Source of the DNA: Geosiphon pyriformis uo1
Taxonomy: Eukaryota > Fungi > Glomeromycota
Direction: 5' to 3'
Assembly (NCBI GenBank): GCA_016748015.1
Contig: JAAOMT010000480.1
Coordinates: 930,001 to 994,000 of the forward strand
Length of the DNA stretch: 64,000 nucleotides
The notes under the pieces are model-generated. The model saw nothing but the letters and a program-made list of their open reading frames with translations. It was not told where the DNA came from and did no database searches. A program made the position numbers and the translations under genes. This document shows, piece by piece, positions 4,097-61,472 of the stretch (the first letter of the stretch is position 1; each line of letters begins with the position of its first letter).

Positions 4097-4986
4097 ATGA
4101 ATAATTTCTTTTCTTCAAATGTTAAAGAAACCGAGCGTCTTGCAACTTATGCAAAAGTTCAAACAGAGTGCAATTCCTCAAGAACAAACTCAATTACGGA
4201 TCTTGCTATTGAAATTGAAGACTATGAGGTTGCTGAAATGATGAAAATCCAAGAAATTGACTTAGGCAGGGTATCAGATCAAAGTTTAAGGCACCAAGAA
4301 CAGGCTCATTGTAGTCTCTTTTGTGACGTCTTATTTCTGCGCAGTATGAAGATAGTTTTGTTTATATTGAATGGATGGATCTTATTAGAGTCTTTTATAT
4401 TTGCTTGTGCTATGGTGAGTAAAATTTTCAAAGTAAAAATATTTTTAATTTACAGTTCTCAAAGTATTTAGTTTAGGCGATAGAATTCATTAAATGTACT
4501 TCATTAAACAAATAGCCAGATCTTGGAGGCAAAAAACTAGTGCTTGTATTTGGAGGATTAATTGCCGAATTAATAATACGTGGGTTCTTAATCTGGACAG
4601 TTTTTGCGAATTCATTATTTTGGCCAACTAGCAAATTATTGTCTTTTGTTACTTTTTTATTTGTGTTGGTTGGTAAGTGAATTATAGCTTTGGTCAGACT
4701 TTCTTGATTTCATTGTTTTCACCTTTGACCAATTTAATTTTTTTTTTCTCGAAAAGGTGGAGAAGTTGCTGTTTATTTTTTAGAGCCATATCATCAACGT
4801 GAGAGGGTAACTTTGTTTATTTTTACAATTCCTTATACTTTAATATTTTTATTTATCAGCATATTCGTCACCATAAGTGCTGATGTCTGTTCGAAACTTG
4901 AAGATAAGAAGCTTTTTGATTTATGCGTGTTTTTGATGTTTTTGATAAGTATGGTGCATGTGGTAAAGGTTTATACTCGTACATAA
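4097..4986 (+). CDS. Uncharacterised ~5-TM membrane protein, family B copy 1
   Basis: Exons 4097-4414, 4516-4672, 4757-4986 (phase-0 then phase-1 introns): ..ILNGWILLESFIFACAM|PDLGG..AELIIRGFL..FVLVG|GEVAVYF..DVCSK..DLCVFLMFLISMVHVVKVYTRT*. Confidence 0.8.
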
Positions 4987-6132
4987 TGATTGGTGACTTA
5001 GAACCTGAGAATTAATCACATTCTAATTTTAACTTTTGAGTGTACTGCTGAATGAGAAATGGGTTTATTAATTGTCTTTTATTAAAAGATTAGAACCGAG
5101 ATTTTTTATAAAAACATAACAAAATAATTTATTTTTAAGAGTTTATTGAGCGTTAAAAAGATAAAGAATAAAGAACTTGATCACTTGATAATGTAATAAA
5201 TTATAAATTATATTTATTATAATAATTTAGCAAAAAAAATTAAAAAAGTTATTAAAAAGCTTTCTTTTATAAAAAAAAAGATTATATTTTTTAGAAATGA
5301 AAAAAATTGTATATTAAGAATTTCATTTAAAAATATTTAAAAATTAAATTTTTTTAGAGTGTTGAACTTGAGCACATGTATAAGTAAAACAATCGTTTGA
5401 ATTTAACAATTAGGTATCAAATTAAAAACTTTAAAATCTATGTAAAAAGTCCTGATAATGATATCATTTTACAATCTGAAACATTTAGGCATCATCCCCA
5501 AAAATGGTCAATCACAATTACCAATGCAGTGCACAAAGAAAATTGATAGACTGAACCAGCAATTAAAGCTATTACCATACTTATTATGGTTTTACTCCTT
5601 CGTTTTCGTAGGACGACGAAATATGTATACTAACACAAGTTTGTAACTTTTCCAATTGTGATACCTAAAAACTCTATGGCGTATTAAGATGGGATTAGAT
5701 ACAATCTTTTCAGCCCGGCCATTATTACTATTCACTTGTTTTCCTCAATAAATTAAGAGATTAAAACAATTTCGTGTTTGAAATTTAAAAAATTTTACTT
5801 TTTTGAGAGATATGAATTTTCTTAAATGAAACATAAAAGAATTGGAACTAGTATGTTTAAAGAGAATTATAGTATATTTTACCATTGGAGTTTGAAATGG
5901 AAAAAATAGCCAGATTGGTTAAATTAAAATGGAAATCTTTCAAATAACATTAATCGATTACTTTGCTCTTTGTCACACAGCTAAACGCAAACTATATATT
6001 CTCAGTGATACAAAAAACGAAACATGAAACATGAAATTCGAAACAAATTGCAGGCATAAAAAAAGAAAAATTAATCGTTTTCTTCGAGTTCTTCAAGGTT
6101 TTTGCCTGTTAAGAAAGTTTTGAATATTTGCG

Positions 6133-7163
6133 ATGGAAGATATTTCGTTGTCATATAATAGGGCTCTAAGACTGATGATACCAACTGCTGTAATTAGTGA
6201 GGAGTCTACAACTTCAATTGATTCCCCTTCGTGGCCAGAACCAATTCATAACAGACCAGAATCAAGTGCTTCGATAGCACTTGATATTGCACATCAGAAT
6301 CTTCGATACTCTGACTCGATAATTTCAGCGGTAGCAGGATTTAAAAAAATGGGAGCTCGAAATTTTTCAAATAAATATCTAGTTTTACCAACGGCGTCAC
6401 AACGAAGTTCAATTACCAATATTGCATGGGAAATCCCAAATTATGAAAATCTAATAAATCCACCAGTCAATATACAAGATGTAAATTCATTACGAAGGGG
6501 ATTAGTAGTTAACAAAAAAATTTCCACATTTTGGCGGTTGATTTGGCTTCTAATAAATATTTTTCTGGTAATTGGTGAAATCTTTTTGATTAAATGTTCG
6601 TCTTCGGTAAGTGAGGCTCAAAAAAAAAAAAAAATTGAAGTTAATGGGACGAGGATAAAATGTTGTTTCTAAAAAAAATTTTAACGTTACATGTTACTTT
6701 TAACTCAAAAAAATTTTCTTTTTTTAGCCGGAATTGCGTGGAATATGGATAGCACTGCTCACACTAGACTTATTATATAAAATTGTATTTGTCATGAATG
6801 TATTGCCATTGCTTGTTGAACTCAAGGAAAAATTTCTTATTGCTGGATTAATAATGATAGGTAAGAATCGATAAGATGTTAAAAAAATGAAATAAAGTAT
6901 TATTAATAATTTCCTTATTTTCGATAATGATAGGAAAAGAGGAGGCGTCAAGCTTTCTGATTGATGTTAATTTCCATGACCTCCCACGAATTTTATGTTT
7001 GATATTTATTGGCTCATACATAGTTTTGGTAGCAACTCTTACAACAATTCTAACCAAGAACCCAATTTACGATGCAACTCATTCGCACGATTGTCTTACT
7101 ATGTCAATAACCGTCCTGAGCCTCATTGTTTGCTCGGTTGTTAAAATGTGTATTGGAATTTAA
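6133..7163 (+). CDS. Uncharacterised ~5-TM membrane protein, family B copy 2
   Basis: Exons 6133-6606, 6728-6860, 6934-7163. Long Ser-rich N-terminus, then WLLINIFL..|PELRG..TLDLLYKI..LIMIG|KEEASSF..HDCLTM..SVVKMCIGI*. Confidence 0.85.
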
Positions 7164-8994
7164 AAATTTAAATTTCTATTAAATTTTATTTATGGTATAA
7201 AAATCTATTTTATTTAATAAATTATATATATTTTTCTAATCAGTTTTATATTTAACAAAATTTATTATTATTTTTCAGGAAAATTCCAAGATAAAAATAT
7301 GCCTTAAATCGCTACGATCATGAATAGGAAGCGGCAAATATTAAACAAACTAAGGTGAAATTCCAAGAAATAGTTTTTTTTTTTAAAAGATAAACTACCT
7401 TTCGTTGAAAGTTTAAAAAAATACATGTATTATTATAATTTTTTTAAAATAGAAAAAATATGTACAGTTAAAATATTTAGAATTAGAAATATATATTCAT
7501 TTTTTTTTGTATAAAATAGACATATCAAAAACTAAAACTTTAATAATAATAATAATAATAATTATTCTATTTCTTTTAAATAAATAATTATTTTTTTATT
7601 GAAAACCATTAAAATTCGATTATATATATTGATTTTAAATAAAATTCAAAAATCTCTTTATTTAAATGTTATTGAAAAAAAAAAAAAAAAAAAGTTTCAA
7701 ATTCTTTTTTAATTAATTTTCATTATAAATTTATAAGCAAATTGCATAAGCAACTAAACATAAAATTTTTTAATTTTAAAAATATTAAATGAATGTACAA
7801 TAAATGAAATTATTTATCAAGTATAGAATCATTCCGTGTCTTTTAAAAAATATTTTTTCAATATCTTGAAAATTTTTTATATAAATTGAAAGCAAAATTT
7901 CATTTTCAAATTTTCTAATACACACATCAAATGTTATTGACAAAATAATTTCTAAATGGTTAGAGCTGTTAAAAAATTAGCCGGGGATCTTTTAATTATA
8001 TAAGATGATTTTTTTCTCTAAATTTAACTATTGACTGAAATATATAAAATATTTAAAACCTCTTTGTAATTTTTTTTTAAATCGAAATAAGACATTTTGG
8101 ATCGGCCAAAAACCAAAACCTAATAGTTTTGAATATAATTTTATTCCATACTGTTTGTGAAATATTTTAAGCAATTTAAAAATTTTTGTCCTTGAATTTT
8201 TTTGATCATTATATAAAAATATCAATTTTCAGTAAATTTAATGTTAGATATTATTTTATCTCTATTGTGAATTTTTGATTTTAAAAAGACTAAAATCGAT
8301 CAATTTCTCATCCAAATTTAAAATGTTGTTTTACCTTCACTTTTCGGATACTATTGTTTACAAAAGAATACATTTCAAAACAAAGTTTTGGAATTTGTTG
8401 ATCACGTACGACAAATGTAAGATTATATTTAAATCTTGAGTTAATCTGGTCAAGAATATTTAAAAGTTTCATAGAGTATTTAAATTTTGTTTTTGATTGA
8501 AAATTTTTAGGGAACACAAAAATTTAACTTGTCATTTAAACTTCATATAATTCATTGTCAATGTGTCCTATACCATTCTGTATTATTTCCACTTTGAAAG
8601 TTAGAATTTTTGAATGGGGTCATTGTGATGCATGCAATACCTAAATCTTCACTCGTCAGCCCAATTTTTTTTTTAGAAAATACGATAATTTTTTTGACCA
8701 CAATGAAGTTTTTGTACAATGATTTACTGAGTGTTGCTAAATTTTAAAGTGTTATCTCTTTGAGGTCTATAAATAATTCATCAAGCAACTGGTAGCTGAT
8801 CAAATGATTGACATTAAATATGACTCTAAAATATAGAGTGATCTAAAAAAAGGGTAGTGTTACTTGAAAATTTCCTTTATGAAATTAATGATCATATAAG
8901 AATCAAGTAACATTGAGATATTTTTTTTTTTTTTTTCAGCTTCCCAAATTTTTCACTTTCCCCATTAAATACGATTTAAATCATTTCTTAAAAT

Positions 8995-9929
8995 ATGTCT
9001 TCTTCAGATGAAAGGCTTAGTACCTCCTCAATGGATGAGATCGCTCTCATTTTCGATAGGTTTGAAGAAAACGATAAAAAGTATTTTTATAATAATAATC
9101 AAGAGGAAAACAACAATAATACATTAAAAAGAAGAGATTTTAGAAGTAGAGCTTTAAAATTTACATGGTCAATTATTTGGTCTCTAGTGAATTTAATAAC
9201 GCTAGTGAGCTTCACTTTCTTGGTTATTCTTACTTACAAACGAGTAGGTATTTAAAAGTTTTCTTTTTAAGAAAAAAAAAAAAAAATTTCAAATGGAAAA
9301 TATTTTCCCAATTTCCGATTAAAGTGTCATATTCTAATTTTCTTATTGAATGAAACTCTTTTAAAATTACTTTCTCAATCAAAAACATAGAAATTCTTAG
9401 AAATTCTGAGTACTTCAATACTTTCACTGGAAGTTTTTGTTCGTATCTTTACCATAATTGTGATTGTAAAACAAGAAAATGTTCGTTTTATGCCAAAAAG
9501 AATTGGAATTTTAATTGGAGTTTTTTTTGGTAAGATAATTTTTTCATTTTCATACAAAAAGAAATTTAATATTAAAAAATTTTGAATTAATAAGAATTTC
9601 TTTTATTTTGAATCATATTATATTTTAAAAATTTTTTTGTACATTTAGGAAAAGAAGATTTTGCACAACTATTTCGTAAACCAAATCAATATCATTTATT
9701 GAGAAAATTAAAAATGATCCTTTTACTTATAATTCTTGTTAATGCTACATCATTAATACTATTGATTGTATTGTTACAGAGTTCTGAAGAATGTAAGAAA
9801 ACTTTGTTTAACAATTGTCTTGTGAATGGGATTAGTGTCTTTGGTTTAGTTTGCATTTGGTTCGATATCATGAAAGATTTTTTCTTTGGATTTTTTTATT
9901 TAAATTCGGAAACGTCAGAAATTAGTTAA
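8995..9929 (+). CDS. Uncharacterised ~5-TM membrane protein, family B copy 3
   Basis: Exons 8995-9243, 9391-9529, 9649-9929: ..WSLVNLITL..YKR|KFLEIL..SLEVFVRIF..GVFFG|KEDFAQ..EECKK..NNCLVNG..DIMKDF..*. Confidence 0.85.
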
Positions 9930-24169: not shown

Positions 24170-24606
24170 AGTAATATAAGGTAAATTTTCAAGTGCCACA
24201 ATATAGCCACTCGGTACTTATTTAACTTAATGTTGATCTCTGACATAGTAATTATGGTAACGATCCCAATGACGTATTGGTATAGTCGCGTTCTAATGCA
24301 CGGAGCAAGTCAAGCTGCAGGCTAAGTTTCTCTTTTTGTTGCACCATAATAACTTGCTGCATTCTGCATAGAACAACCACTGGAACAACTTGATGAAAAC
24401 TGGCTTTGTTTTCCTAAGAAAGCTTCAGTTTACTTGGCGACTTTTCGTAGCGCACTAAATTTTATACAATAACGAATTTTTCACCTCTGTCTATACCCTA
24501 GAGTTTTATCATTTGCCTGTATTATATTTCCTCTGATATTCCAACACTCCTTCTAATAAATAGTTAGTTGTATAAAAGTAAAACCGCGGCAAAATTTCCG
24601 CAAAGA

Positions 24607-26214
24607 ATGGCCCATATAGATGAACAGTTATTTCTTGATTTGAATCGTCAAATCAAAGAATTACAGCACGAAAATCGTCGTTTACAATCCTCCCAAGTTC
24701 CTCGATCAGTCGTTATTGACGTGGTAGATGATCATGAAAGGACAACTTTGCTTCAACATGAGATCATTTCGTCTCAAAATGTGCTTCATACATTTGCCTT
24801 CGTCAAAGGAAAAAATGTTGTAATCAATGAACAAGCTGCACGTTTTCTATTTTCACAATATCTTGCTCTTGCTCCTGATGGAAAACTCTCTAAAAATCAT
24901 TTGGGCTCTTTATTGCAACGACGAATGATTGAATTGAGCTTTGGTATATTAACTAATCAAGTTAAACCTCAATCGTTTAAGCATGATCAAGTCTTCGAAA
25001 ATAGTGATCAATACAAATTGGAATTAGAAATATCTTCAGCCGCAGATAACTTCTTGGATTTGCTTACTTGTTTGAATCCATCGGTAAATGCATCATCTAA
25101 CGCTTATATGAGTGCTGTAGCGAATAAACTTCGTCAACAAATTTTTTCATCCATGACTTCCTATAGTGTAGAAAACTCTGGAAGACTCTTTAAAGAATTG
25201 CAAGAACTGCTTCTTCATGAAATGAACAAATATCGTACTATCTCGAATGATCGAGCCATCAAAGAAGCCAAAAATCTCGCCATAAAAATGATTAATCTTT
25301 TCTATCAACTGAAAAGCAACGATGTTAGAGAAGTTCGGTTTTTCGGTAACGGTGGTTTTTTAGATCGTCAGACCATGGATGGTGGTTATGATGATGATGA
25401 CGAAGAATTCGATTTTCAAATTGATTTTTGCTACTTCCCATTGATCACAACCATTGATAAAAATGGAGAAGAACAGGTTGTTAGTAAAGCAAAGGTGTGG
25501 CTACGTTCTAAAGATGATCCTTGCTTTCACAAACATGAAGATGTGACTCTGTCATTAATGGCACCTATAGAAGAATTAAAAAAATCTCAAGTCAATATTT
25601 CAAATATGGAAGGATATGACATTGTTCAACCAATTACTGGATGTTGGCGCTCGGGTTCTTCAAACTGTGAACCTGAAAAGGCAGCGCTTCGTAAAGAACG
25701 TGATGAATGGAGAAAAAGTTATGAGTCGATCTGTAAAGAAGTGGAAACCCAAAAGCAAGAATCATCTGATAGGATTGAAAAACTTACAAAACAGGTCACA
25801 GAATATTTGGAAGAAAAAGAAGCTTTTGAATTAGAAGCAAAGGCTTTAAAAGATCGACAGCAAACTTTGGACAGTGAAAATGATGATTTAAAAGATAAAA
25901 TAGAGAAGTTAGAATCTACTTCACGTGAAAAACAAGAACGTGAGGAAAAACGTGTTGTTGAAATCTGTGAAGAGATAAAAGAGAAAGAGGCAGAAGTCCA
26001 GCGAGAACTTTCTGCTGAAATTGGAATGTTGAGAAAACAGCTTCAAGCTGCCGAGAACCAGGTTGTTCAATATGCTGAACAGGAAGACTATTTTCTTGGT
26101 GAAATAAAGAACTTATCATTTATAAATCAGTCGAAAGTCATTGAAAATCACAAAGATCCAGCCAGAGCACCGCCTTCTCCAATTGAAGACGATTTCGTTT
26201 TGATTGATGAATAA
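24607..26214 (+). CDS. Intronless protein with unnamed helical+beta domain followed by a long coiled coil
   Basis: Long open frame (first ATG 24607); E/K-rich heptads at the C-terminus; N-terminal domain homologous to 43113-45071. Confidence 0.85.
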   Translation: MAHIDEQLFLDLNRQIKELQHENRRLQSSQVPRSVVIDVVDDHERTTLLQHEIISSQNVLHTFAFVKGKNVVINEQAARFLFSQYLALAPDGKLSKNHLGSLLQRRMIELSFGILTNQVKPQSFKHDQVFENSDQYKLELEISSAADNFLDLLTCLNPSVNASSNAYMSAVANKLRQQIFSSMTSYSVENSGRLFKELQELLLHEMNKYRTISNDRAIKEAKNLAIKMINLFYQLKSNDVREVRFFGNGGFLDRQTMDGGYDDDDEEFDFQIDFCYFPLITTIDKNGEEQVVSKAKVWLRSKDDPCFHKHEDVTLSLMAPIEELKKSQVNISNMEGYDIVQPITGCWRSGSSNCEPEKAALRKERDEWRKSYESICKEVETQKQESSDRIEKLTKQVTEYLEEKEAFELEAKALKDRQQTLDSENDDLKDKIEKLESTSREKQEREEKRVVEICEEIKEKEAEVQRELSAEIGMLRKQLQAAENQVVQYAEQEDYFLGEIKNLSFINQSKVIENHKDPARAPPSPIEDDFVLIDE

Positions 26215-26947: not shown

Positions 26948-27687
26948 TCATCTATACGTCACCAACAAAAGGTTCTTTATTGACAAAAGACAAACACTAG
27001 TCAATAGCGAAATCGCAAGCAAAGTACACAAAGAATCTTCCGTACATTTTTCATCTCGAACTAAAAGCACATAGAAAGGTGTAACTAATAATGAATTTAG
27101 CATTGTTATTACATCTAGGACATGGCTTGATAAATTCCCTTCAAAATGATCCATTAAGTGTGGCATATCTTCTTTTCGTGAATTCAGGGATAGCATAGTT
27201 ATATTTATTGAAATGTGTCGAAAATGAATAAAAAATTACAAAATTACAAGAAAATCTCACCAATTATCAAGAGAATGAATAGAAAAAATTTCCACGGAAA
27301 TTCAGGTACTCCCAATGCGCTCGCGTATCTAACCGTTACTCGTATTCCCAGATCAAAACTTATGAATAAGGACAAAAATGTTTTTGCTATTCAAGCATAA
27401 TTGAACCGACAACCAAATGAACACTCAGTAATATTAAAAATAATCATCCAAAAGTAAATTACCCCCTGTCTTAGAGCTTTTGTGAATAAGTTCTCTGATC
27501 TTGGGGAACTAGGTGAGAATATTTCTTGTATTGTTTCGTTAAAATATTCCATCGTTTCTGCTAAATCGGATATCGAGTTTTTTGAAATTTCTTTGATTGA
27601 ATATAAGAAAATTTTACAGAGAAGATGCTCAATGCAATAGTTACCATTCGCGAGTTTTGTTTGTGGTTGCATTTCAAAATCCCCCAT
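26948..27687 (-). pseudogene. Family B ~5-TM membrane protein, copy 4 (disrupted)
   Basis: MGDFEM..WMIIFNITE..YA*IAKTFLSLFISFDLGIRV..LLIIG|(GTGAG donor)..KEDMPHL..LDVITMLNSLLVTPFYVLLVRDEKCTEDSLC..SIKNLLLVTYR*. In-frame TGA at 27391-27393. The intron-2 acceptor reads CAC instead of CAG (27178-27180). Confidence 0.75.
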
Positions 27688-28933: not shown

Positions 28934-30716
28934 CTATTGATTAGCTTTAGGCCTTAAATAAACTTTCAGTTCCTTGCACTGGTTTACAATACGATAAGAG
29001 TACTCTAATGGTTTTTTTGGATTCACTAATTCAATCTCGTATGCTGTAAACAAAGTAATTAACACAATCTTCATCTCTGTCATTGCCATAAATCTCCCCG
29101 GACAAATTCTAATTCCACCACCAAACGGTAAAAAAGTGTTCTTTTCAATTTTTGTTTCTGATTCACTATTCTTCATGAACCGGTCAGGATCAAATTTTTT
29201 TGGATTTGACCAATGGGAATTGTGACAATGAATTCCTTGAATGTTTGCAAAAAACATTGTACCGGCATTGAACTTGCAACCAGCAATTTCATCATCTCGT
29301 GAGATTTCTTTAAAGACTAATGGAGTTACCGGAACGAGGCGAGCGGTTTCTTTAATTATTGCCTCACAGTAAACGAGTTTGTCGAGGTCTTCAAGGGTTA
29401 TTTGGCGGTGCGTAAGGCTGTCAGTTCCAAAAATTTGCTTGATTTCTTGGAGCAGACGGGATTTGACTTCAGGATATTGGGAGATAAAGTAAACAATGAA
29501 ACTGATTGAATTTGCAGTCTGTTAAAAAGTAAAATTGGTGGTTAGTGAATTGAATACCCTTTAATAAATGATAAAAAATGAAATCATTGGATAAAAAAAT
29601 TACTTACGGTATCAATACCCGCTAAAAATACTTCTAAAATATCAGCAGAAATTTCTGCATCAGTCAATAGCCTTGAATGTTCACCATTCGGATCATCTTC
29701 AATGTTAGTTGTTAACAAGGTTGTCAAAATATTAGCATCTAATTTCTCGGGCGTATTTTTAATTTCTTCCCTTCTTTCCTCAATAATATCCGAAATAATC
29801 CCTTTCAAAGCTTGATCGTTTTTTAAACATTTATGGGTATAATGTCTGAATCCAAGTACATAATATCTAATAAACTGTGGAAAAAAGAAGAAATATTGTA
29901 ATCCTGACATCCAATCCATAATTCGTTTTAAAAAAATTTCCGATTCGACCAGGGATTTTCCTTCTGATAATTCAATTTTTTGACTTTTAGGTGCGATAGA
30001 ATTGTAATAATTTCTTAAAGAATTAATTCGATTTCCGGTGGTCGACTTCAAAGTGATATCAGTGGTGTATCGAAACATCCATTGTGTGAGGTCAAGTTCT
30101 GTATTAGGGCCTAACTTTTCCCAGTAACTTTTCGCGTCGATTAATAATTTTTGAGATTCGGTTATGATTTGAGTTAGGAAGTCGTGTGATACTATTGATT
30201 GGGTTAAAATTTTACGATTGAGCCGCCATGATGCTACATCATGATTAAACACGATTCCTCGAGTTTGAAGACCTAGTTCTGTAAATCCATCATTTCTTGA
30301 CCCCTATATTTGGAAATAGAGTTAATTAAAACTTTTTAATTAGCAATTTTATAAAAAAAAATAAAAATAAACCAAAATAATTAATCAGAAATTTAACTAA
30401 CCCTATTAAAGAAATTAAATTTCGCTGACGGTTTCATCATCTTTTCGATTAAATCTGCTCTACCTAAATAGATATTTCTTTCAGAGCCCATATAAACTTC
30501 CCAAATGTCTCCATATTTTGCTTGTAATCGTTGTGCAAATTTTGCTGGATCGCTACCCATCTGATGTAAATTTCCAATTAAAGGAAGTGGTAGCGGACCA
30601 GGTAATGGCGATTGACGTGTGAAATACTTATAGTAAAATCGTATAATGTAAGTAACAAAAAACAACAGCGTAATCTTTAGGTAGCTTTCAAATGTTAGTG
30701 TTAACATGAATGCCAT
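28934..30716 (-). CDS. Cytochrome P450 monooxygenase
   Basis: Exons 30716-30402, 30303-29608, 29518-28934. N-terminal TM, PGPLPLPLIGN, I-helix AGIDT|TANS, ETAR (ExxR), FDPDRF and heme motif FGGGIRICPG. Confidence 0.95.
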
Positions 30717-38911: not shown

Positions 38912-40482
38912 TTAAATTAAGGAGAATTCTTGATCAGCAGATTGATATAAAGGGTCTACAAAAAAATCCTCATCAAACTCTTGAGGCAATGTCAAAATAT
39001 GACTATGATAAATCGCCAAAGAATGTGAATTGGACTTTTCTGGGGGAGCATATGTTTCCGAAACTTTCTTAAACACTTCAGCACTTTCCTCAAATTGTCT
39101 CAAAGCTTCTTTTGTCTCCGGATATTCAAAATTCACATCAGGAAAATTAAGAGCCAAATTCCAATCTTCTAATATATCTCGCAATTCTAATGCAGTTGGA
39201 CGTTTTTCGGGATCTTGATGCCAACATGATGTCATAAGTTTCACGTAACATTGAGGTGTTCCTTCTATTATATCCGGGCGTCTCCCATCCCATATTTCAA
39301 AAACTAAAAGGATAATGAATGTAAAAATTGTTAGGGATTCTTCTTCAAGAGCAAATAAAAATTTCAAGACCGAAAAGCAATTACCGAGGCTAGCATCATG
39401 TGGTACATTGTAAAATGGTGGTTGGCCTGAAGTAATTTGCCACATTATCATTCCTAATGAATATATGTCTTTTTGTTAAGTAGAGATGAACCGAAAATAA
39501 AATTTATAATATATAAAAAAAAAAAAAGCGAGGAACCGAAAATAAAATTTATAATATATAAAAAAAAAAAAAGCGAGGAACAAAAGATTTCAAGACCATT
39601 TACCCGCTTTTTTTGTATATGGCTTATTTCTTAGAACTTCAGGAGCTATATAAGGCAGAACGCCACAAATATCCTCATTTTTTTTCCCTTCTTCAACTGC
39701 TCCTAAATTTTCAAAACAACTCTGTCCGAAATCAACAATAGTGGGTCCATCATAGGATAACAACATATTCCCAGGGTGTAAATCTCGATGTAGTAAATCA
39801 ATTTTATGAATGAACCAAAGATTTATACAGAGCGACCTCATGAAACGGATTTTTTCAGGCCACAAAAATGTTGTAAAATTTTTTTCCAAGTATTGTCGTA
39901 GATCCCCGTGCTCACAATACTCCATCACCAGTAGGTATCCGAATGAGTTTTTTGTGATTCCAAGAGGTGAAATTTTGTTCACGTAGTTTACGCGGTCATG
40001 AAGATAATATGCATTTAACTTTATTCAAAAATAATTGATTGAAGACAGAATATCAGGTTTAAACAAAGTCACGGATATCAACAACTTAATCATAAGTTAC
40101 AAACCTCATGGAAAACTTTATTCGAATCATTCTCAAGAGGTAAGGTTTTAAGAGCAACTTGTTGCGGTCCCTTTCTCAGCCAACTTTTTGTTTCTTTATC
40201 CCATTCGGTGAATTCTCCCGGGCTCCAAGTTGATTTATAAACTGTCCCATATCCACCTTGACCAATTTTTTCCACAGATTCAAACTCGTCGAACGGGATC
40301 CACATGAAAATAGAATTAATATTCAATGATTCGAGGTTGTATTTTTTAATGAATTCATTCAAAGGTTGATAATTCGTGCTAGCCCAAATGTATTTTTGTA
40401 TTGAAGATAATTTTTCTTGACGACAGATATTACACAAAAAAATGGACTCCGAACATTTTGGACAGGCATCTATAAGTGACAT
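38912..40482 (-). CDS. Tyrosine-kinase-like (TKL) Ser/Thr protein kinase of the Glomeromycotina-expanded type
   Basis: Four exons. N-terminal CxxC..CxxC, WIPFDEF, GQGGYGTVY, VALK, HRDLHPGN, DFG, GVLPYIAPE, DIYSLG, CWHQDPEKRP. Confidence 0.92.
39488..39577. repeat. Tandem duplication of a ~45-bp unit inside kinase intron 2
   Basis: GAACCGAAAATAAAATTTATAATATAT(A)nGCGAG repeated twice. Confidence 0.85.
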
Positions 40483-43112
40483 GTTAATTTTTAGGGGTTG
40501 AGTAGAATTCAAAGTAGAAAAATCGCTTCAATCAATATATACTTCAATTAAATTTCAAATTTACAATTTTGGGAATACAAAATATATGTAATAAAACGAG
40601 CTTCAGGTAGTACCAATTACTTTAATTAAGTTTGATCCACAAAAACATCAAATTGTAAAACTAAAGAAAACTTTATTCGGCATTTAATTTGCCATGAGTA
40701 TAGTGATATGATTTTTATAAGCAATCTAACTACATATATTTTCTATTTTTTTAATCAATACTGCGCTAGATATACCTTATAAATTAAATCTTGAATAGAT
40801 TAAAATTTTTCAATTTTTTCCATGGGGAAAATCTAGTGTTCTTGTGAAGTAAACCCGGTATACATACTAAAAAAACAATATAAGAAGAAAAGAAATCATT
40901 GCTCTAAAATATATACTTACTATTATCTGTAATATTGGTATCAAATTAATCTCTATAAGTTTTCAAAGAGAGTTTATTATGAGGTTTGGAGCACAATTAT
41001 TGCCATAGTAAAATTTAAGAAGAAACCTAGCTATATATAATTTATTTTCAACAACGCAAGAATTAAAATCTTGACGTAAAGCAAGAAAATACAATTTTTT
41101 AAATCTTTATAACGCTTTGAGTTATATAAACTAAAAAAAAATCACGATTAAGATGGTTTTTTGTGTGAAAATAACATTAACCACTTTTGAACTTTTTTAA
41201 ATTTATTTTTTCCCGCAAAAAAAAAAAAAAAAAAAAAAAAAATATCCACTTTGGTGTATTTGGTTAATGCTTTAAAATTAATTTATGCAAACAAAGTTCC
41301 CGATTGAATCATAGAGCACTTTTAAAAAAGGATAAATGGGTAACAAATATTTGGCCTTTTTTTTTTTGGATGCAGCTATTCTATTTAAAAAACTTAGATT
41401 AAATATTTATAAGGGGCTTTCAGATTTTTTTTACATTTTTTGCTTTAATTCTGTTTTTAATTAAAAGACTTTTTAGGGGGTATAGAAAGAATTTTTCGGT
41501 CATATGCTTATGGTAAAATATGTTGAAAGAACTCCGGAGCTTCTTAATGCATATTTTTTTATGTCATTAGTATGCAGAATATGTTTCATAAAAACCTTCA
41601 CATCTTTCACTTTATTAGCTATCGTCATGTTCCCTGTTTTGTAATTTTTTTTTCTTTTACAGTTGATCTAATTGACATAATTAACAAATACACATACCTT
41701 CCTTATACATGTATTTCGAATTTCATTGTGTATGCAAATAGAAAACAGGCAAAAATAACGTAATTAGTTAGACTAGGCGTCAAAACATTTTTGATTTTTG
41801 ATCGCATAATGACATTAGTGATCGATAGATTAAAAAATCCCCATTCAAATCTAAAATATCAAATAAATAAATATGTCACTTCAATTATTGAAAATGATCA
41901 TTTTTTAGCCAGATGACCAATAATTAGAAAAAGGGGAATCAAGGAAGCTTTACTTTTGGAGATGACGAATGATGATGCGAAAAGCTTGACCATTTTAAAG
42001 TAGCCCCGTTTTTAAAAGCAACTTTTGCATCAAGTATTTCTTTCAACGATCAACTTGAGAATGTTGCAATCGGTTTCACAGAAAGTTTCCATCGTCTTAA
42101 TGAGTAATTATATGCTAGACAAAATATCGACAGTTTTTCCATTTTGTACTACTCCCTAATTGGATTCAGACAATTCCTTGGTATTTCCTGCGAATTAGCA
42201 GTTAAAAAGTTAACCAGTAAAAATGATAATTACTTGCTCTAGAAACTAGGATCGAACTGCATATGGGAAAAAAGCACAAAGACAAAACCTAAAAGGGAAG
42301 AATATCATGAAAACTAACTTCTGTATTCATGGTCACGCAATACTATTGCGACTTTGCATTTCAGCTCATACTAATGGAGAATAATCACAATGAAATAATT
42401 GTCCTGCGGATTTAATGTTTAAATGGGAATACCCTCTTTAATGGATTGTTATAATGGTAGAGATCATCGGAAATTAAGGAGAATCAAAATTTTTTTGCGC
42501 TTGTGACCTGATCAATTCTGCACACCGAAAAAAACCATCAATCCTTTTTCCGATCCCGAAATTCCTCTTTTTCTGTTAGAATCGTATTAGTTATTCAATC
42601 TCTCTCAAAAAATTCTTCATTTGAAAAGTAGGTGAGGTTATTTTCATCAGAAAAAGATGAACGCCAAAGTTGATTATTTTCCTCTTGGCTTTTAGATATG
42701 TTTACTTTGTCTTTTTTATGAAACAAGTTTTTGATTCAACAACTTGTTTGAAAAAAAAATTCCCGAATCAGCATTAAAAATCTGGGTACATATAGCGTAG
42801 TAACACATGAAAGAATGAAGTATGAAAAACCGAAACTAAAATTAAAGGACCAATCAATTACCCTTTCTAGATGAAAATTTAAGTAAACCAAAATTGGTTT
42901 GGAACGGTTCAAGTCCTTTGCAATGAAGAATAATTGCTTTTATAGAAGTAGAATATGTATAAATATAATTCAAATGATCAAGGCTCCCAATAAAAACCAT
43001 TGAAAGAAATAAAAACTGCAAATTTGTCTTTTATCTTTTCCGTTTGTTTAAATTTCTCTTCTTGAAATCAGAGATAATTTCTTCAAATTTAAAAATCTAT
43101 TAATAAAAAGAA

Positions 43113-45071
43113 ATGTTGCGACAGAGGATAAAGAAAAGTTCAATTAAAATATTGAACGAACCAATGAATTTTGACGAGAAAGCAGAAATATACAATACTG
43201 AAATGGAACTGTGGAAGACACAGGTTGAAGAAATGGTTCTGCTTCGTGAAAATGAAAGAAAAAGTTATCAAGAAACATTTATCATGAACAATGAGTTGAA
43301 AGAAGAAATTAGTCGTTTGAATCAATGGGTGGTTCACCTAAACAGTGCAAACAATCAGGCAGCAGACGATTTGACCAAAAATCTCGAAACCATATTGTCA
43401 TTAAAAGAAGAATGGGAGGAAGCAACCAAAAATTTCTGTGATGAAAAGTCACACTACAAACTTTTAAAAGAAAATGAAAGTCTAAAGGCACATATAAAAA
43501 AACTCGAAGAAGAAATTAGAACGTACAAATCTCGGCGACCATTCATATGCGATCAAAATACTGTGGAGTCAAAACATGATTTTTCACAGCTCCAATGTGA
43601 TCTGGAGGGCTTGAACGACTCATTACGAAATACTACTTCACTCAAAAATCCAGATTTCAGAATTCATGAAGAGGCGGCGAAACGGCTCTTAGATAAGTAT
43701 GATGTAAAATACTACCCAGGTGAACCTTTACCAAGAAATCTGGTTAGTGCTGCTATGCAACGCCACATAATCGAAACGGTTCTACAACGAATGAACGCCC
43801 ATTTTGATCAATCAGATAAACTTGATCGATCGGCAAAGCCAATAGTTTGGCGCTCGTTGGTAGGAAAAATGGAGGACCCAAAAAAGGAAATTTCAAAGGA
43901 ATCCATGCACGATCAACAAATTATTGCAATGATGGGATCAATGGCTGAACATCTCAGCTCTTTTGCCGAATCAAATCCTGCTGCCCATTCAATTGCTGAG
44001 AAATCTCGGATCCAACTACGCCAACTCATATTCAATCTACTGGCCTCTCGAACCTTGGAAAATTCATCGTCCGAGACCGTGGACTCAATTTGCAGAGAAA
44101 TTTTGGCGAACTTGAATGAAATCCGTTCGATCACAGATATCCAACAAAAACAGCTTTTGGCACAGCAAGATAGAGCAACGATTCGACAATGTATTTCAAC
44201 AATTTTTTTCAAACTGGCATCTCAATATCCACCTTTGCATATTGAATGGCTTCAAAAAAGATTACCTGTTGACCCTTCTATCATGGATATCACATCGATT
44301 GAGGATGATGAGTCCATTGAGATTTGTTCTTTCCCTTTGATAAAGGTCACCGAAACTGGTGATATTGTGTTTAAAGCCCATGTTGAGACTTCCTCTGAAG
44401 GCACTAAATGTGGGGACGACTTAAGCCACATTGAACAATATTCGGATGTAGTAGTTGACGCTACTCATACCGAGAATACCAGCAATACTTTTATTGAACC
44501 AAAAAAAGATACAAAAGAGATTTCGAAAACAGAGAAAGATCTCGAAACAGAAGGTGCTTAAATTCGAGTATTCTTTGTTGGTATATTGAGATAGAGAAAT
44601 AAATTTAAATACGACCCAAATTTACTAAATTAGTCATTTTTTTATATTTTATAGTTGTCAAAACTCCAGCACCCAAGATTTGCTTCAAGATTGCACGAAA
44701 ACTTGAACGGAAAAACAGTAAATTAGTAAAAAAGTAAGTACGAAAAAAGCGTCTTTGTTTCGGTCCTTTTAAAGTTAAAGCGTGTAAAACTGATATCTTA
44801 CAATCCAAAATTTTTTAGTGATGATAAGCTGATTCCTTTTAATACCCCAGTCTTAAAAAAAGCCCAAAATCCCACGCATAAATATGTCAAGCGATCCAAT
44901 ACTGCACCACCTATGCAACAACAACAACCACGGCTTCAGAAGTCATATATCAATGGATTAGCCAGTTGGGCAACAACATATGTACCACCATCTGTTCAAA
45001 CATGGGCAACTTCACATGTACCCCCATCTATCCAATCAAAATTCGGGGAATATATTCCCTATTATATTTAA
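43113..45071 (+). CDS. Coiled-coil protein with the same unnamed domain as 24607-26214; C-terminal Pro/Gln tail
   Basis: Exon 1 43113-44552, plus exons 44655-44734 and 44819-45071, which splice in frame (VVKTPAPK..LVK|NDDKLIPF..MQQQQPR..WATTYVPPSVQTWATSHVPPSIQSKFGEYIPYYI*). Confidence 0.8.
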
Positions 45072-53632: not shown

Positions 53633-53699
53633 AGAACAATAATAACAATAACAACAATAACAACAATAATAATAACAATAACAACAGCAACAGCAACAA
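53633..53699. repeat. Imperfect (AAC/AAT/CAG)n trinucleotide tract
   Basis: Directly visible. Confidence 0.75.
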
Positions 53700-56298: not shown

Positions 56299-57322
56299 AT
56301 GCAATTTTTATTTGAAATTTGTCTTCCCACTGAGATACTTCAAGATATTTTTAACCGACTAACTACCAAGAATGATTTATTCTCTTGCGCGCTTGTTAAT
56401 CGTCAATGGTGTCAAGTTGCCGTGCCTATATTATGGAAAAATATTTTGGAAGCCAAAAATCGAATAAGAATAGTTGAAGTGTTTCTATTCTGTTTACCAG
56501 AAGCTGACAAAGAATCGTTATCTCATTATGAAATTCCCATACCCAAATTTCGACAACCGGTTGCAACATTTAATTACCCTTCATTCTTGAAACTTATTTG
56601 TTTGAACGACATTTATCATGACATCAAGGATTATATTTGTTCTTGTTGTAAACCCGCAAGTATCAATTCCACCCGAGTTGCTGCAGAACAAATAAGATTT
56701 TTGCAAAAGATTTTGTTAGAATATTTTGCCAGAAATTCTCCCAAACTCTCGTCGATGATTATTGATCAACGTGGTGGGTTGCTTGTACCACTCCTGGTCA
56801 ATTCTGAACTCGATTTATTGACAGCAAGAATCACAACACTTAAAATACATTGGGAATTTAACATTTTTCCAGCGCTTCAACTGCTCTCAAATACAAAATT
56901 ACAGAACATAGTAAGTCAAAGTATTTCTTGTTCAATTTGATTTCATATTTTCTCGATATTTTATTTATTAAAATAATAATTACAATTTTTTTTTTGATAC
57001 AAAGCAAAATTTAGACTTTGACTTACAAAATGGAAAAGTTCTGGAACTATTTAAATTCATAAAAATGCAACGTAATCTCAACACTTTGAAAATTAAATTA
57101 GGATATATAGGTTATGAAAATATCACCTTTGATGAAATTAGTTCTGTTATAACACAAAATTCTCGCACACTTGTGACACTTTCACTTAATGAATGTGGAT
57201 TATTGGAAAGAAAAATTTTTGATATCCTATCACTTTGCATTAAACTAGAAGTTTTTGAAATCATAAATTGTTATACAGAAACATATCAAATCACTAATTA
57301 TGTAAAATTAATACGGCAATGA
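56299..57322 (+). CDS. F-box protein with degenerate LRR-like C-terminus
   Basis: LPTEILQDIF..LFSCALVNRQWCQVAVPILW, FNYPSFLK. Exons 56299-56910 and 57005-57322 in frame; LxxLxL repeats. The 3' end is uncertain. Confidence 0.88.
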
Positions 57323-57390
57323 ATGAATGAATGAATGAATGAATGATTTTTTGATTTGTACATAAATATTTAACTTTTTTTTTTCTGATG

Positions 57391-57427
<37 letters not shown>
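57318..57427. repeat. (GAAT)n and (ATA)n microsatellites at the 3' end of the F-box gene
   Basis: Directly visible. Confidence 0.85.
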
Positions 57428-57428
<1 letters not shown>

Positions 57429-58577
57429 GGAATATTTATTTTGTCAATAATAGAAATAAATAAATAGCATTGACATAGCCTCTTTTTTATCCATTTCTAG
57501 TAACATTATTTTAAATGTTACAACAGTAACAATCTTCTCCCGTATCATACGAAATACTTGATCGTAATACCACCAACTAACTTTAAATAAATATGCATTG
57601 AAAAATTATAAGGGATTAAATTCAAAACCTTTTTTTTTTTTCAAATAGAAAACTGTAAAGAAAAAATTTATTTTATTTTATTATGTATAATATTTTTGAA
57701 TAAAGCAATATTTTTTTAAAAAAAAAAAAACTAAATAAAAAGCTTTTATTGAAAAACCATTAAAATATAACAAAAATTATTAAATAATGGTAAAAATTTA
57801 ATAATAATTAAATTATTAAAACTTTTTTAATAACCAATATCAAAAACAAAAATATTAATTTAAAACATGTGACAAAATGTTTAATTACAAAAAATTATAT
57901 TTAGTGTTTAAATTTTATTTCTTTTGATATTGAATTAAGTTCCATCACCAGATCCTTAAATTTTTATTTCTAAAAGTTAGGAAAAACATATTCACAATAA
58001 TGAAAGCCAGGTTTTTTGATGAATTTTTAGTTGGATTATCAAAAAAAACTTTATGGCTATTAGGGGATAAACCATAATTTAAAAAAAAAAAAATTCACAG
58101 AGAATGTTCGTTTAATCTATGCATTCTCTTATTTGATATCACTTTTTCGATTCTCATTAAAAAATATTAAATGTGGCTTGTTAAAGATGACATCAAAATT
58201 TTAAATCTTAAAGTATCCAAATTTGAATCTAGCCTTTAATAATAAAAACAGAACGGCTTTGAATATGAGAATTTCAGAAAAAGGAAAAATAAGGTATTTC
58301 CTTTATAATGGCTTTTAAAATTGTTTATTTGTGGCGTAAAAATTATTGATAATCAATCACTACGGATTATTTTCCAAAAAAAAAACCTCCCCCCCCAATC
58401 TCAAGGTAAAAGCTTTAAAAATCTACTATTTCAAAGATTGATCAAAATTTTCGAAACCACTATTTCTGAAACAAAAAGTTCTTCTTATTAATTTATTAAT
58501 TAATTCTTTTTTTCTTTCTTTCTTTGTTAAAAGTTAACAAATTTTAAAGATTTCCTTTTCCAAATTCCTGTAAAAGA

Positions 58578-59751
58578 ATGGAGAATCCGCCACAAAATAC
58601 TTTAGAGCCTTCCGATATTCTTCCTAGAAGAGTCAGGGTTTCAAATACGTATTGCTGCTTTTGTATTAATTTAAGACCGGCGGTCATTGCGATCAGTGTT
58701 TTTTGGGCGGTAATTTTTAACTTGAAAAAGTTTTTGAATTCAATATAAAATTTGAAGTATACCCACCCATAAAAGAAATAATTTATTTCCTTTTTGTTTT
58801 CGCTTCATAGTTCTATGCACTCTACAGAGTGATTATAGATTTTATCAATTTTCAATATAGGGATACCATTACAGATGATTGTAAGAATTTAAAATTTTTT
58901 CAAGTTCAGACTAACAAAAAAATTTAAAAATTAAAAAGAAATCTTTCAAATTGAAACATTTATCTAATGAAAAATTCTTTAATCTTTTTTTTTAGTCACA
59001 CATTACACGCGTAATTTTAATCTTATTGATGGAATAGTTTCTTTAATCATTCTGCTAGGAGCAACATTCGGAATAGTTGTCGTCGGCTTTACCGTACGTT
59101 TTCATTTTTCACTTTTTTTTTTTACGATTTAGAATAATTTAAATAATTTTTTTTTATTTAAACCCCATCCACAAAAAAAAATATATTCTTTCTTAAAAAA
59201 TATTCTCTTTTTACAAATTTTTAGCGTGATATACAACTTTTAAAGATCTATGAAATCATCGGCTATCTAATCGCAACAATTCGATCAGTAATCGAAATAG
59301 CTAGTTTCATCATTTTAATCGCTTACAAAAATCAATTTATCGACTTTTGTAATAGTTCAATTGTTCCTATCGATAAAGTGGACGCAAATACTTATTTCGT
59401 TTATGAAGTATCAGGGGATAACAGCCAAGGTGCCACAATAATTTTTAAGAGAAAAGATTGTGAAACGGCTTATAGGTGGTTAGTGCCAGAAATTTTTTTT
59501 AGAGCGTTTTTTACTACTTTGCTCTCGGTGAGTTAGTTTATTTCATCAAAAAATTGAAAATAGAAATGACTATTTGAGATAAAAATTATATATATATATA
59601 TAAATATTTTTATTATTAATTTTAGATTTACTTCGCGATTGTGATTTCGTCATATACCAGGGAGCGTCGAATCCAAGCCATACTTGATGATGCACATGAA
59701 ACAAATACTCCACCTATTCCAGATGATTCGAAAGAATTAATCGAAAAATAA
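58578..59751 (+). CDS. Uncharacterised 4-TM membrane protein, family A copy 2
   Basis: Exons 58578-58709, 58811-58880, 58996-59093, 59225-59527, 59626-59751: MENPP..YCCFCINLRPAVIAI..|..|FTHYTRNFNLIDG..GATFGIVVVGFT|..KNQFIDFC..KDCETAY..|IYFAIVISSYTRERR..EK*. Absent from the ORF track. Confidence 0.85.
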
Positions 59752-60666
59752 GGTATTAGAAGGAATATTAGAAGGATATAAAAATTAATAATGAGTCTTT
59801 AAATTATACATTTATCTTTGTGTCATTTACAAGAGTTTAAGAGGACTCATTTGTTTTTTTTTTAATTCTTTAAATTTTTAAATTTTTTTCATCCTTTTTA
59901 AAAAATTAAAAATTTTTCTTTTTTGTAAACTAATTTGATTTCTTCTTTCAAAAAATCTGGATTAAAAGAAGATAATAAAAAAGGATATTAGATACCCACC
60001 CACAATAATGATCTTTCACCCACCCAAGTTTAAACATTTACCTTTTTATTTTCCAACCTAACTGTATCAATCAAACTAGTAAAAGCCCCATATTTAATAC
60101 TCTGTATTTTTTAAGTATGACGTTACTTAATTAAAAATTTTTCCCAATGCCAAGCTATTTGTAGATGTATCTGAAGGACATTTCATATGCCTTTAAGATA
60201 TATAAAATCTTAGTAGGGAATATCATTTTCTGTACAATTATTTAATTTTTCAGGGGGAAATTACCCGTTTTCAAAGTATTGGTTGAACCATCTGACCACG
60301 ATTTTCACCCACCGACCCACCCACATCAGTATACATGTACATATATGAAAGCAACAGAACTTTTTTTTCCCATATGCTTATGGTCAATCAAATAAAAATT
60401 ATACTTTACTAAAATGGTTAATAAAAGGGAAACATTCTTTTATATCTTTGGGGATCACGGGAAATTTTAAAATTTATTAAAATTCCACCCAATAAAAAAC
60501 TTTATACAGGTAAACGGAAATAAAATTCTAATAATTTTACATCTTTTAATTATATCATAATTTTTATGTTTCTCTCTGGATCTAAAAAATAAATAAAATA
60601 AAATAAAAAGTATTTCATACCTGTAAACCCTCCCTCCCTCCCTCCCTCCCTCTCAAATTTTGATCT

Positions 60667-61472
60667 TTAATTATATCTATAAAACACTATTAACCATAAA
60701 CTTTTCAAAAATAATGTCGCAGCACAAATTATTAACAAGATAGCTTTCATATTACAATATGAATTTTCTTTACAACTTTCTTGACGTAGAATTAACACGA
60801 GAAAAGGAATCACAGTTCCGGTATTTATCAATGAAATAATATCCCATATGCTGGTATGTAGACTATGTCCGAACGCATTCATATGTCCTATATCTTCTTT
60901 TCCTATTAAAATTATTTTAAAATGGTTTGATAATAGTGAATTCAAGGAATTTAACATTTATAAATTTTTTTCTCAAAATCATATATTACCTATGAACCAG
61001 ATTATACCACAAAGAGCTCTTGCGAAAAATTGACATTGATTATTAGATGGCTTCAATTGTAAAAGAGCCATTGTACATCGTGCGACTATATCCAAACTAA
61101 TATTTAATGATACAAAAAATTGTTGGACAGTCTATTTAAAAAAAACAAAAACATTAGACACATGTTAGAATTTCGAAAAAAAAAAAATCCAAATGTAAAA
61201 ACTTTTTTAATTTTCGTTACCTCTACGGGATATGTAGCTATAAATCCCAAAGTACCAATAATAAAATAAATATTAAGAGAAATTGCTAAAATCCAAGCTA
61301 TGATTCTGGCCACATATTTTGCCGCCTTAAAACATTGTACTTTTTGTCGTGGTGGTCCAGGGACAAATTTATATCGTATAGTCTTTTCAAATGTATCAAT
61401 TCCATCGGCTAGATCGCTTATTGAATTTTCGCGAGTTGGTGAATCAATTATAATTTCTTTTGATTCATTCAT
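60667..61472 (-). CDS. Uncharacterised ~5-TM membrane protein, family B copy 5
   Basis: Exons 61472-61221, 61131-60990, 60902-60667: ..AISLNIYF..YPVE|TVQQFF..SLDIVARC..IWFIG|KEDIGHM..WDIISLINT..RQESCKENSYC..FLKSLWL..*. Confidence 0.85.

What the first reader, a model, noticed from the sequence alone, without database searches (positions are those of the whole stretch)
4097..61472. Unnamed five-copy family of ~5-TM membrane proteins with fixed intron positions and conserved intramembrane charges
Seen: five genes (4097-4986, 6133-7163, 8995-9929 tandem on +; 26948-27687 and 60667-61472 on -). Their cytosolic-type N-termini have no visible similarity, yet the core is shared. TM1 has an Asn (LNG/INI/VNL/FNI/LNI). 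A phase-0 intron follows TM1 in the four intact copies. TM2 has [DE]xxx[RK] (ELIIR/DLLYK/EVFVR/DLGIR/DIVAR). A phase-1 intron splits the Gly of G|[KG]E. One or two Cys precede the last TM, and a Lys follows it (VVK/VVK/IMK/SIK/FLK). The ORF track shows only fragments. Inference: extreme divergence around conserved buried polar residues fits a rapidly diversifying receptor, channel or scramblase family under birth-and-death evolution (e.g. nonself recognition or host sensing). I cannot assign it to a known family. The TM2 E/D-x3-R/K recalls the S2 helix of voltage-sensor domains, but this is only an analogy.
Basis: partly seen in the sequence, partly recalled or inferred. Interest (0 to 1): 0.8.

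Follow-up and report, generated by a model that had tools for sequence, protein, structure and literature searches.

The report
Orphan fungal membrane-protein gene family
The five genes are real and belong to an undescribed family of small multi-pass membrane proteins, seen so far only in Geosiphon and its relatives Ambispora, that grows and decays by local duplication; what the proteins do is still unknown.

Summary
The window comes from Geosiphon pyriformis. The five genes sit at the stated places. Four are intact and share canonical GT..AG introns: phase 0 after TM1, phase 1 inside the Gly codon of G|KE. Copy 4 is a pseudogene, with an in-frame TGA, a degenerate TM1 and an acceptor changed from AG to AC.

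- All copies share a 13-residue N-terminal motif.
- Copies 4 and 5 very probably have an extra short 5' exon.
- The "third TM" is only about 10 uncharged residues, so four TMs plus one short helix fits at least as well as five.
- The TM1 Asn and the TM2 acid-x3-base pair are not invariant across the wider family.

The genome holds at least nine copies. The only relatives in public protein sets are from Ambispora leptoticha and A. gerdemannii (Archaeosporales), and those checked have the same introns.

Pfam, PDB sequences, two AlphaFold models with Foldseek and VIA searches, and the ESM Atlas gave no known family or fold. Birth-and-death evolution is supported. The receptor, channel or voltage-sensor readings remain untested. 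No RNA run was listed.

Public gene models for four copies drop conserved helices.

The parts
4097..4986 (+). Copy c1, 234 aa. Exons 4097-4414, 4516-4672, 4757-4986. N-motif at 4190-4228. The most divergent member.
   Evidence: Model and splice sites. Motif. Profile score not above shuffles. Public model P0008 (170 aa) skips TM3-TM4.
6133..7163 (+). Copy c2, 278 aa. Exons 6133-6606, 6728-6860, 6934-7163. N-motif at 6409-6447. Long unique N-terminal extension.
   Evidence: 29.5 bits against a profile built without it. Public model P0001 (G9A89_017861, 244 aa) uses a donor at 6504/6505 and so loses TM1.
8995..9929 (+). Copy c3, 222 aa. Exons 8995-9243, 9391-9529, 9649-9929. N-motif at 9028-9066.
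   Evidence: 36.5 bits against a profile built without it. No annotated protein containing its last exon was returned by the exhaustive search.
26948..27687 (-). Copy c4, a pseudogene. Exons 27687-27645 (short 5' exon), 27590-27261, 27171-26948. N-motif at 27576-27538.
   Evidence: The last exon is still well conserved (E 1e-24 to 3e-15), so decay is recent.
27391..27393 (-). In-frame TGA in c4, at the place where the other copies have the phase-0 intron. The preceding TM1 is shortened and no longer hydrophobic.
   Evidence: ORF end. Translations. Alignment.
27178..27179 (-). c4 intron-2 acceptor reads AC where c3, c5 and the other copies have AG before GAAAAGAAGA. The next AG is 6 nt downstream and in frame.
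   Evidence: Sequence compared. Coordinates.
60667..61646 (-). Copy c5, revised four-exon model (219 aa): 61646-61616, 61456-61221, 61131-60990, 60902-60667. N-motif at 61424-61386. The first intron holds an (AATG)n microsatellite.
   Evidence: The 31-nt phase-1 first exon matches that of the C790 paralog. Public model P0004 shares that donor but uses an acceptor inside the motif, and adds a 3' intron that removes the last TM.

Best explanation
These genes belong to a taxonomically restricted, undescribed family of small (about 200-280 aa) polytopic membrane proteins of the fungal order Archaeosporales.

Shared architecture:
- a probably cytosolic N-terminal helix carrying a conserved Ser...Ala...Ile...Phe/Tyr motif
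- a Pro-rich, basic juxtamembrane linker
- two TM helices: TM1 with Trp and usually Asn, TM2 with an invariant Asp/Glu usually paired with Arg/Lys one turn on
- a short hydrophobic helix ending in G-K-E-D
- two more TM helices: one with a polar Asp/Asp/Thr/Asn face in the conserved subgroup, the last with Ser and a mid-helix Lys, separated by a short loop that usually holds a Cys pair

Shown: the family expands by local duplication, diverges very fast in the c1-c3 tandem trio, and loses copies to decay.

Inferred mechanism: the conserved polar and charged side chains inside the membrane make the helices pack with each other or with copies or partners into an oligomer. The invariant N-terminal helix, whose Ser usually follows a basic residue, is the regulated or partner-binding handle.

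My estimates:
- about 0.9 that the family is real and lineage-restricted
- about 0.3 that the assembly is a small ion- or solute-conducting pore
- about 0.3 that it is a non-conducting scaffold or trafficking adaptor
- the rest is open
For: Gene reality:
- Canonical introns with conserved position and phase are seen in Geosiphon and in the two Ambispora leptoticha genes that were mapped.
- Exon GC exceeds intron GC, and the frames are open.
- Pairwise E-values within the conserved subgroup run from 1e-10 to 1e-92.

Family size: nine Geosiphon copies on four contigs.

Restriction:
- The exhaustive profile search of 1.84 billion representatives returned only 5 proteins, all from Geosiphon or Ambispora leptoticha.
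- Two word searches added only Geosiphon models and one A. gerdemannii protein.

No known family or fold.

Architecture:
- Hydropathy and segment charges.
- Six helices in both AlphaFold models.

Conserved residues: 11-sequence alignment.

Birth and death:
- Star tree with terminal branches of 2.5-3.7 for c1-c3 against about 1 for most of the rest; the C660 copy is also long at 2.2.
- c4 lesions.
- Decayed tandem copy in Ambispora at L029:13800-14600.
Against: - No expression data: no RNA run was listed, so every junction is a prediction. Public models differ from mine at four loci.
- Both structure models are weak (pLDDT 68 and 71, pTM 0.40 and 0.38), so neither helix packing nor topology is established.
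- The 'conserved buried charges' are not invariant: Asn is replaced by Ser or Gly in three members, the +4 base is missing in two, and the polar face of the fourth TM is lost in c1-c3.
- c1 is linked to the family only by the motif, its gene structure and its position.
- Unannotated genomes of other fungi could not be searched, so 'restricted' means restricted among predicted proteins.
- Nothing tested here speaks to conduction, oligomerisation or phosphorylation.
Confidence: 0.6

Rival explanations
1. The family is a very distant, unrecognised branch of a known four-pass superfamily (MS4A/CD20-like, tetraspanin, MARVEL/CASP, or claudin/Sur7-like) and works as those do, organising membrane domains or forming small oligomeric channels.
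For: - Size, number of helices and probably cytosolic termini are similar.
- Short outer loops, with a Cys pair in the second one.
- Polar residues inside the TM helices.
- Tandem gene arrangement.
- The structure models are too weak to exclude a shared fold.
Against: - No Pfam hit for any of these families at E up to 10 on five full-length proteins, or at E up to 1 on the exons.
- No PDB sequence hit.
- Foldseek found nothing at E <= 0.001 in two runs.
- There is no large second loop with a CCG motif, and no claudin-type first-loop motif.
Confidence: 0.15
2. One reading: a rapidly diversifying surface receptor family for nonself recognition or host or symbiont sensing.
For: - The tandem trio c1-c3 has branch lengths 2.5-3.7 times those of most other copies, yet intact frames and splice sites.
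- Pseudogenes in two genera.
- The neighbourhood holds other expanded families: P450, kinase, F-box.
Against: - With four TMs the outward-facing loops are only 8-14 and 11-20 residues. With five TMs a further 17-22 residue loop would face out. Either way there is little surface for ligand diversity.
- The best-kept element is the probably cytosolic N-terminal motif.
- The conserved subgroup has a clear ortholog pair between Geosiphon and Ambispora at E 8e-92, which is not the pattern of a recognition locus.
- The family occurs both in a host of cyanobacteria and in plant-root symbionts.
- No population data exist to test positive selection.
Confidence: 0.12
3. c1, c2 and c3 are relaxed, functionless or mis-modelled remnants, and only the conserved subgroup (c5 and the copies elsewhere) is functional.
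For: - Extreme divergence; c1 is not detectable by the profile.
- The polar face of the fourth TM is lost.
- No expression data.
- Public models splice c1 and c2 differently, and no model containing c3's last exon was returned.
Against: - All three keep open exons, canonical splice sites at the family positions, the N-motif, the TM2 acid-base pair and the hydrophobic segments.
- At 8.3% stop probability per codon, neutral sequence this diverged would not stay open.
- The true pseudogene c4 shows what decay looks like here.
Confidence: 0.12
4. A voltage-sensor-like domain in which the TM2 acid acts as the S2 counter-charge.
For: Only the [DE]xxx[RK] spacing in TM2.
Against: - No helix carries repeated Arg/Lys at every third position.
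- No voltage-sensor structure among the fold matches.
- No ion-transport Pfam hit.
- The +4 base is absent in two members.
Confidence: 0.02

Closest known systems
MS4A / CD20 family (Pfam PF04103), from my own knowledge
   Same: - Small proteins of about 200-300 aa with four membrane passes and cytosolic ends.
- A disulfide in the second outer loop.
- Genes in tandem clusters that diverge quickly.
- Thought to act as oligomers.
   Different: - No sequence or fold match.
- This family has a conserved N-terminal helix motif, a short extra hydrophobic helix ending in GKED, and a TM2 acid-base pair.
- It is fungal and restricted to one order.
Tetraspanins (PF00335; fungal Pls1/Tsp), from my own knowledge
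   Same: Four passes, a conserved Asn in TM1 and polar residues in later TM helices, and a role through lateral association in membranes.
   Different: - There is no large second extracellular loop and no CCG motif. The loops here are 8-20 residues.
- No Pfam hit.
CASP / MARVEL-type four-pass proteins, from my own knowledge
   Same: Small four-pass proteins with conserved charged residues inside TM helices that drive self-assembly into membrane domains.
   Different: - The charged positions differ: Arg in TM1 and Asp in TM3 there, against an acid plus base in TM2 and a Lys in the last TM here.
- No Pfam hit.
DUF679 / DMP (PF05078)
   Same: Small multi-pass membrane proteins. This was the only membrane-family Pfam row for c5's last exon.
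   Different: - E = 0.058 and 13.8 bits against a cut-off of 25. It matches the wrong end of the profile, and the hit did not recur in any full-length member. It is a chance match.

Membership tests
Any Pfam-A family | Score at or above the family's gathering threshold | tested here: not met
   Ten exon translations and five full-length proteins at E up to 10. Every row was far below its cut-off.
Voltage-sensor domain | S4 helix with Arg/Lys at every third position, plus a four-helix S1-S4 fold | tested here: not met
   No such helix in the 11-sequence alignment. No voltage-sensor structure among the fold matches.
Voltage-sensor domain | Acidic counter-charge in S2 | tested here: inconclusive
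   An invariant Asp/Glu sits in TM2, but a single buried acid is common in membrane proteins.
Tetraspanin | Large second extracellular loop with a CCG motif and conserved Cys | tested here: not met
   The loop between the last two TMs is 11-20 residues with at most two Cys and no CCG.
MS4A / CD20 | Match to PF04103 or to CD20 structures | tested here: not met
   No Pfam row. No CD20 chain among the Foldseek or VIA rows. The models are weak, so a shared fold is not excluded.
The family defined here (Archaeosporales N-motif / GKED membrane proteins) | N-terminal motif S-[ILM]-x-x-h-A-x-x-[IMF]-x-x-[FY]-x upstream of TM1 | tested here: met
   Present in all five window copies, four other Geosiphon copies and three Ambispora proteins.
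The family defined here | Phase-0 intron after TM1 and phase-1 intron in the Gly codon before [KRG][EQ] | tested here: met
   - c1, c2, c3, c5
- C790a, C718 and C660 copies
- C790b
- both Ambispora leptoticha genes
- c4 has lost the first intron and mutated the acceptor of the second.
The family defined here | Significant profile similarity over the membrane core | tested here: inconclusive
   Met for c2, c3, c4 and c5. Not met for c1.

The most novel reading that the evidence does not exclude
An order-specific family of small oligomeric membrane pores or transducers, gated or docked through a phosphorylatable N-terminal helix. The fast-evolving tandem trio would adapt it to different partners at the symbiotic interface of early-diverging Glomeromycotina. 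This would be a new membrane-protein fold class with no relatives outside Archaeosporales.
Probability: 0.12. Interest if true: 0.65.

Novelty: new variant of a known kind. Interest (0 to 1): 0.35.

Why it matters
If the family is functional, it is a membrane-protein family private to the oldest lineage of Glomeromycotina, which includes the only fungus known to house cyanobacteria inside its cells. Such lineage-private membrane proteins are candidates for lineage-specific cell biology. The family also offers a compact natural series, from conserved to extremely diverged copies, for asking which residues a small helical membrane bundle really needs.

There is a practical result too. The public Geosiphon gene models at these loci are unreliable. 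Four of them drop conserved helices, and no annotated protein was returned for at least two further copies. Orthology and orphan-gene counts for this genome are therefore affected.

Tried and rejected
1. RNA evidence. No RNA run was listed for window:4050-9990, so read laying was not used and no junction could be checked.
2. One profile spanning all exons from exon-wise rows. MAFFT stacked the exons on top of each other, so the exhaustive search used the last-exon profile only (A4).
3. Internal duplication (N-helix+TM1+TM2 against GKED-helix+TM4+TM5), suggested by that stacking. hhalign gave P = 0.11, no better than the reversed controls. Rejected.
4. DUF679, SLC3A2_N, MscS_TM and RPN11_C Pfam rows. 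All were far below their cut-offs and did not recur across members. Chance.
5. Fold assignment. Foldseek pdb twice, VIA wide and the Atlas gave only generic helical matches.
6. Conserved neighbours. The Ambispora loci have SWIRM, CDH-cyt/DOMON and Fungal_trans genes nearby, and the window has P450, kinase and F-box genes. No neighbour is shared.
7. A tiny 27-36 nt intron that would rescue c4. It is too short and would still leave a 14-residue TM1. Rejected.
8. dN/dS between paralogs. Not attempted, because divergence is far beyond saturation.
9. Literature. No paper mentions the locus tags. The paper on variable Glomeromycotina surface proteins (PMC8786786) concerns disordered Pro/Gly-rich proteins, not this family.
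Full report
ORGANISM AND LIMITS

The window is G000:C704:930001-994000 of Geosiphon pyriformis. GC is about 27%.

Database searches used single exons by reference, ORFs by reference, or public protein ids (P0001-P0008).
- Joined translations were made only inside local scripts, for alignment, hydropathy, shuffle tests and a tree.
- No RNA run was listed.

THE OBSERVATION

Reading the DNA and translating the models confirms five related genes.

- c1, c2 and c3 lie in tandem on the + strand within 6 kb. c4 and c5 lie on the - strand, 17 kb and 51 kb further on.
- Every intron in the models is GT..AG and 54-158 nt long.
- In c1, c2, c3 and c5 a phase-0 intron follows TM1.
- In all five a phase-1 intron falls after the first base of a Gly codon that precedes K-E (G-E in c1).
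- Exon GC is 0.28-0.35 against 0.17-0.27 for introns. With a stop probability of 8.3% per codon, a 230-codon open frame has a chance probability of about 2e-9.
- A profile built from the conserved members without c1-c3 scores c3 at 36.5 bits and c2 at 29.5 bits. The best of 9000 composition-matched shuffles scores 15 bits.
- c1 scores only 7.6-9.9 bits, inside the shuffle range.

First, the N-termini are not unrelated.
- All copies carry S-[ILM]-x-x-h-A-x-x-[IMF]-x-x-[FY]-x, some 25-45 residues before TM1.
- A pattern derived from eleven other members, without c1, still fits c1.
- It matches exactly five places in the six-frame translation of the window, all in these genes. By chance 0.006 matches are expected.
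- This motif, the gene structure and the tandem position are what tie c1 to the family.

Second, c4 and c5 very probably begin with a short extra exon.
- In c5 it is 31 nt (61646-61616), phase 1. That is the same length and phase as in the C790 paralog.
- It joins to an acceptor at 61457/61456, upstream of the motif.
- c4 has the equivalent exon (27687-27645) and a 54-nt intron.

Third, c4 is a pseudogene.
- TM1 is shortened and polar.
- An in-frame TGA (27393-27391) sits where the phase-0 intron should be.
- The acceptor of the phase-1 intron reads AC instead of AG.

Fourth, the segment counted as TM3 has only about 10 uncharged residues, lying between a conserved Lys/Arg and G-K-E-D.
- The loop before the last TM is net acidic and usually holds a Cys pair.
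- The N-terminal juxtamembrane stretch is net positive or neutral in most copies, net negative only in c1.
- An arrangement with both ends in the cytosol, four passes and one short non-spanning helix fits these features at least as well as five passes. This is inference, since no topology predictor was available.

FAMILY SIZE AND RANGE

Own-genome searches found four further Geosiphon copies:
- two tail-to-tail on C790 (L006 and the gene of P0005)
- one on C718 (L007)
- one on C660 (L028)
All four have the same two core introns. Three show the extra 5' exon, and P0005's annotated start lies inside the motif, which continues in frame upstream.

The exhaustive search with a seven-row last-exon profile against 1.84 billion representatives returned only five proteins at E <= 0.001. 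Three are from Geosiphon and two from Ambispora leptoticha.

Word searches with a full-length profile and an N-half profile added only two more Geosiphon gene models and one A. gerdemannii protein.

The A. leptoticha genes have the same phase-0 and phase-1 introns and the short first exon.

Among predicted proteins the family is therefore confined to Archaeosporales. Unannotated fungal genomes could not be searched with these tools.

EVOLUTION

The maximum-likelihood tree is a star.
- The only supported pair is the C790a copy with Ambispora P0002 (88/97; pairwise E 8e-92), a clear ortholog pair.
- Terminal branches are about 1 substitution per site for most members, 2.2 for the C660 copy, and 2.5-3.7 for c1-c3.
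- The tandem trio nevertheless keeps open frames, splice sites, the motif and the TM2 acid-base pair. It is diverging under some constraint rather than decaying.

Decay is seen in c4 and in an unannotated tandem copy about 3 kb downstream of P0002 in Ambispora (L029:13800-14600). That copy has frameshifts and an internal duplication.

Birth-and-death is thus supported in two genera.

CONSERVED RESIDUES

- Nearly invariant: the motif Ser and Ala; Trp at the start of TM1; Gly in TM1; Asp/Glu in TM2; Lys/Arg before the short helix; G-[KR]-[EQ]-[DE]; the second Cys; Ile-Ser in the last TM; and a mid-helix Lys (Gly in the C718 copy).
- The TM1 Asn is Ser in two members and Gly in one.
- The basic residue four positions after the TM2 acid is missing in P0003 and P0005.
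- The conserved subgroup has a polar D-x2-D-x2-T-x2-N face and I-P-F in the fourth TM. c1-c3 have lost most of that.
- The Ser of the N-motif usually follows Lys/Arg at -2 or -3 and precedes a hydrophobic residue. That resembles a basophilic kinase site. This is inference from my own knowledge and was not tested.

COMPARISON WITH KNOWN FAMILIES

- Pfam: nothing on ten exons or on five full-length proteins.
- PDB sequences: nothing.
- ESM Atlas features: below 0.9, with no named cluster.
- AlphaFold: two models (P0002 and P0003, with 15- and 17-row alignments) agree on six helices but are weak (pLDDT 67.8 and 71.1, pTM 0.40 and 0.38).
- Foldseek against the PDB: no match at E <= 0.001, twice.
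- Atlas shape search: TM no higher than 0.41 by query.
- No voltage-sensor, tetraspanin, CD20, claudin or MARVEL structure stood out.
- An internal-repeat idea was tested and rejected.

MECHANISM

Shown: a real, multi-copy, order-restricted gene family for small helical membrane proteins with a conserved N-terminal helix, and duplication-divergence-decay dynamics.

Inferred: the polar and charged residues kept inside hydrophobic helices are there for helix-helix association within an oligomer or with a partner, and the N-terminal helix is the cytosolic handle.

- I put about 0.3 on a small conducting pore, about 0.3 on a non-conducting scaffold or trafficking adaptor, and leave the rest open.

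ANNOTATION NOTE

- Public models P0001 (c2) and P0008 (c1) skip conserved helices.
- P0004 (c5) and P0006 (C790a) add a 3' intron that removes the last TM. The Ambispora orthologs show that TM to be contiguous.
- No annotated protein containing the last exon of c3 or of the C718 copy was returned.

VERDICT

The family is real and undescribed, its function is unknown, and the more colourful functional readings are untested. Interest is moderate.

Noticed in passing
window 6133-7163, 4097-4986, 60274-61646; L006: Public Geosiphon gene models at four family loci look mis-spliced. G9A89_017861 loses TM1, G9A89_017860 loses TM3-TM4, and G9A89_017879 and G9A89_023788 replace the last TM with a downstream exon. 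No annotated protein was returned for c3 or for the C718 copy.
   Followed up: partly
L029:13800-14600 (Ambispora leptoticha CAJVPS010000711.1): An unannotated, decayed tandem copy of the P0002 gene. It has the same start (MEQSS...) but carries frameshifts and an internal duplication of the segment before TM1.
   Followed up: partly
window 61466-61510 (-) and 60625-60655 (-): An (AATG)n microsatellite lies inside the proposed first intron of c5. A (GGGA)n run lies just after the c5 stop codon.
   Followed up: no
L007:710-765: The C718 paralog has a (TCA)n run that encodes a poly-Ser tract of about 15-20 residues in its first exon.
   Followed up: no
window 29584-30252 (-), 38912-40512 (-), 56299-56940 (+): Neighbouring ORFs match cytochrome P450 (E 4e-17), protein kinase (E 4e-20, split over several ORFs) and F-box (E 3e-12). 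These are typical expanded families of Glomeromycotina, and none recurs next to other family members.
   Followed up: partly
window 24568-26214 (+) and 43113-44561 (+): Two long uninterrupted ORFs (548 and 482 aa) have no Pfam match at E <= 0.001.
   Followed up: no
L030:1071-1877 (Ambispora leptoticha): The 204-aa gene called just upstream of P0003 has no Pfam domain. It looks soluble and does not look like a family member.
   Followed up: partly
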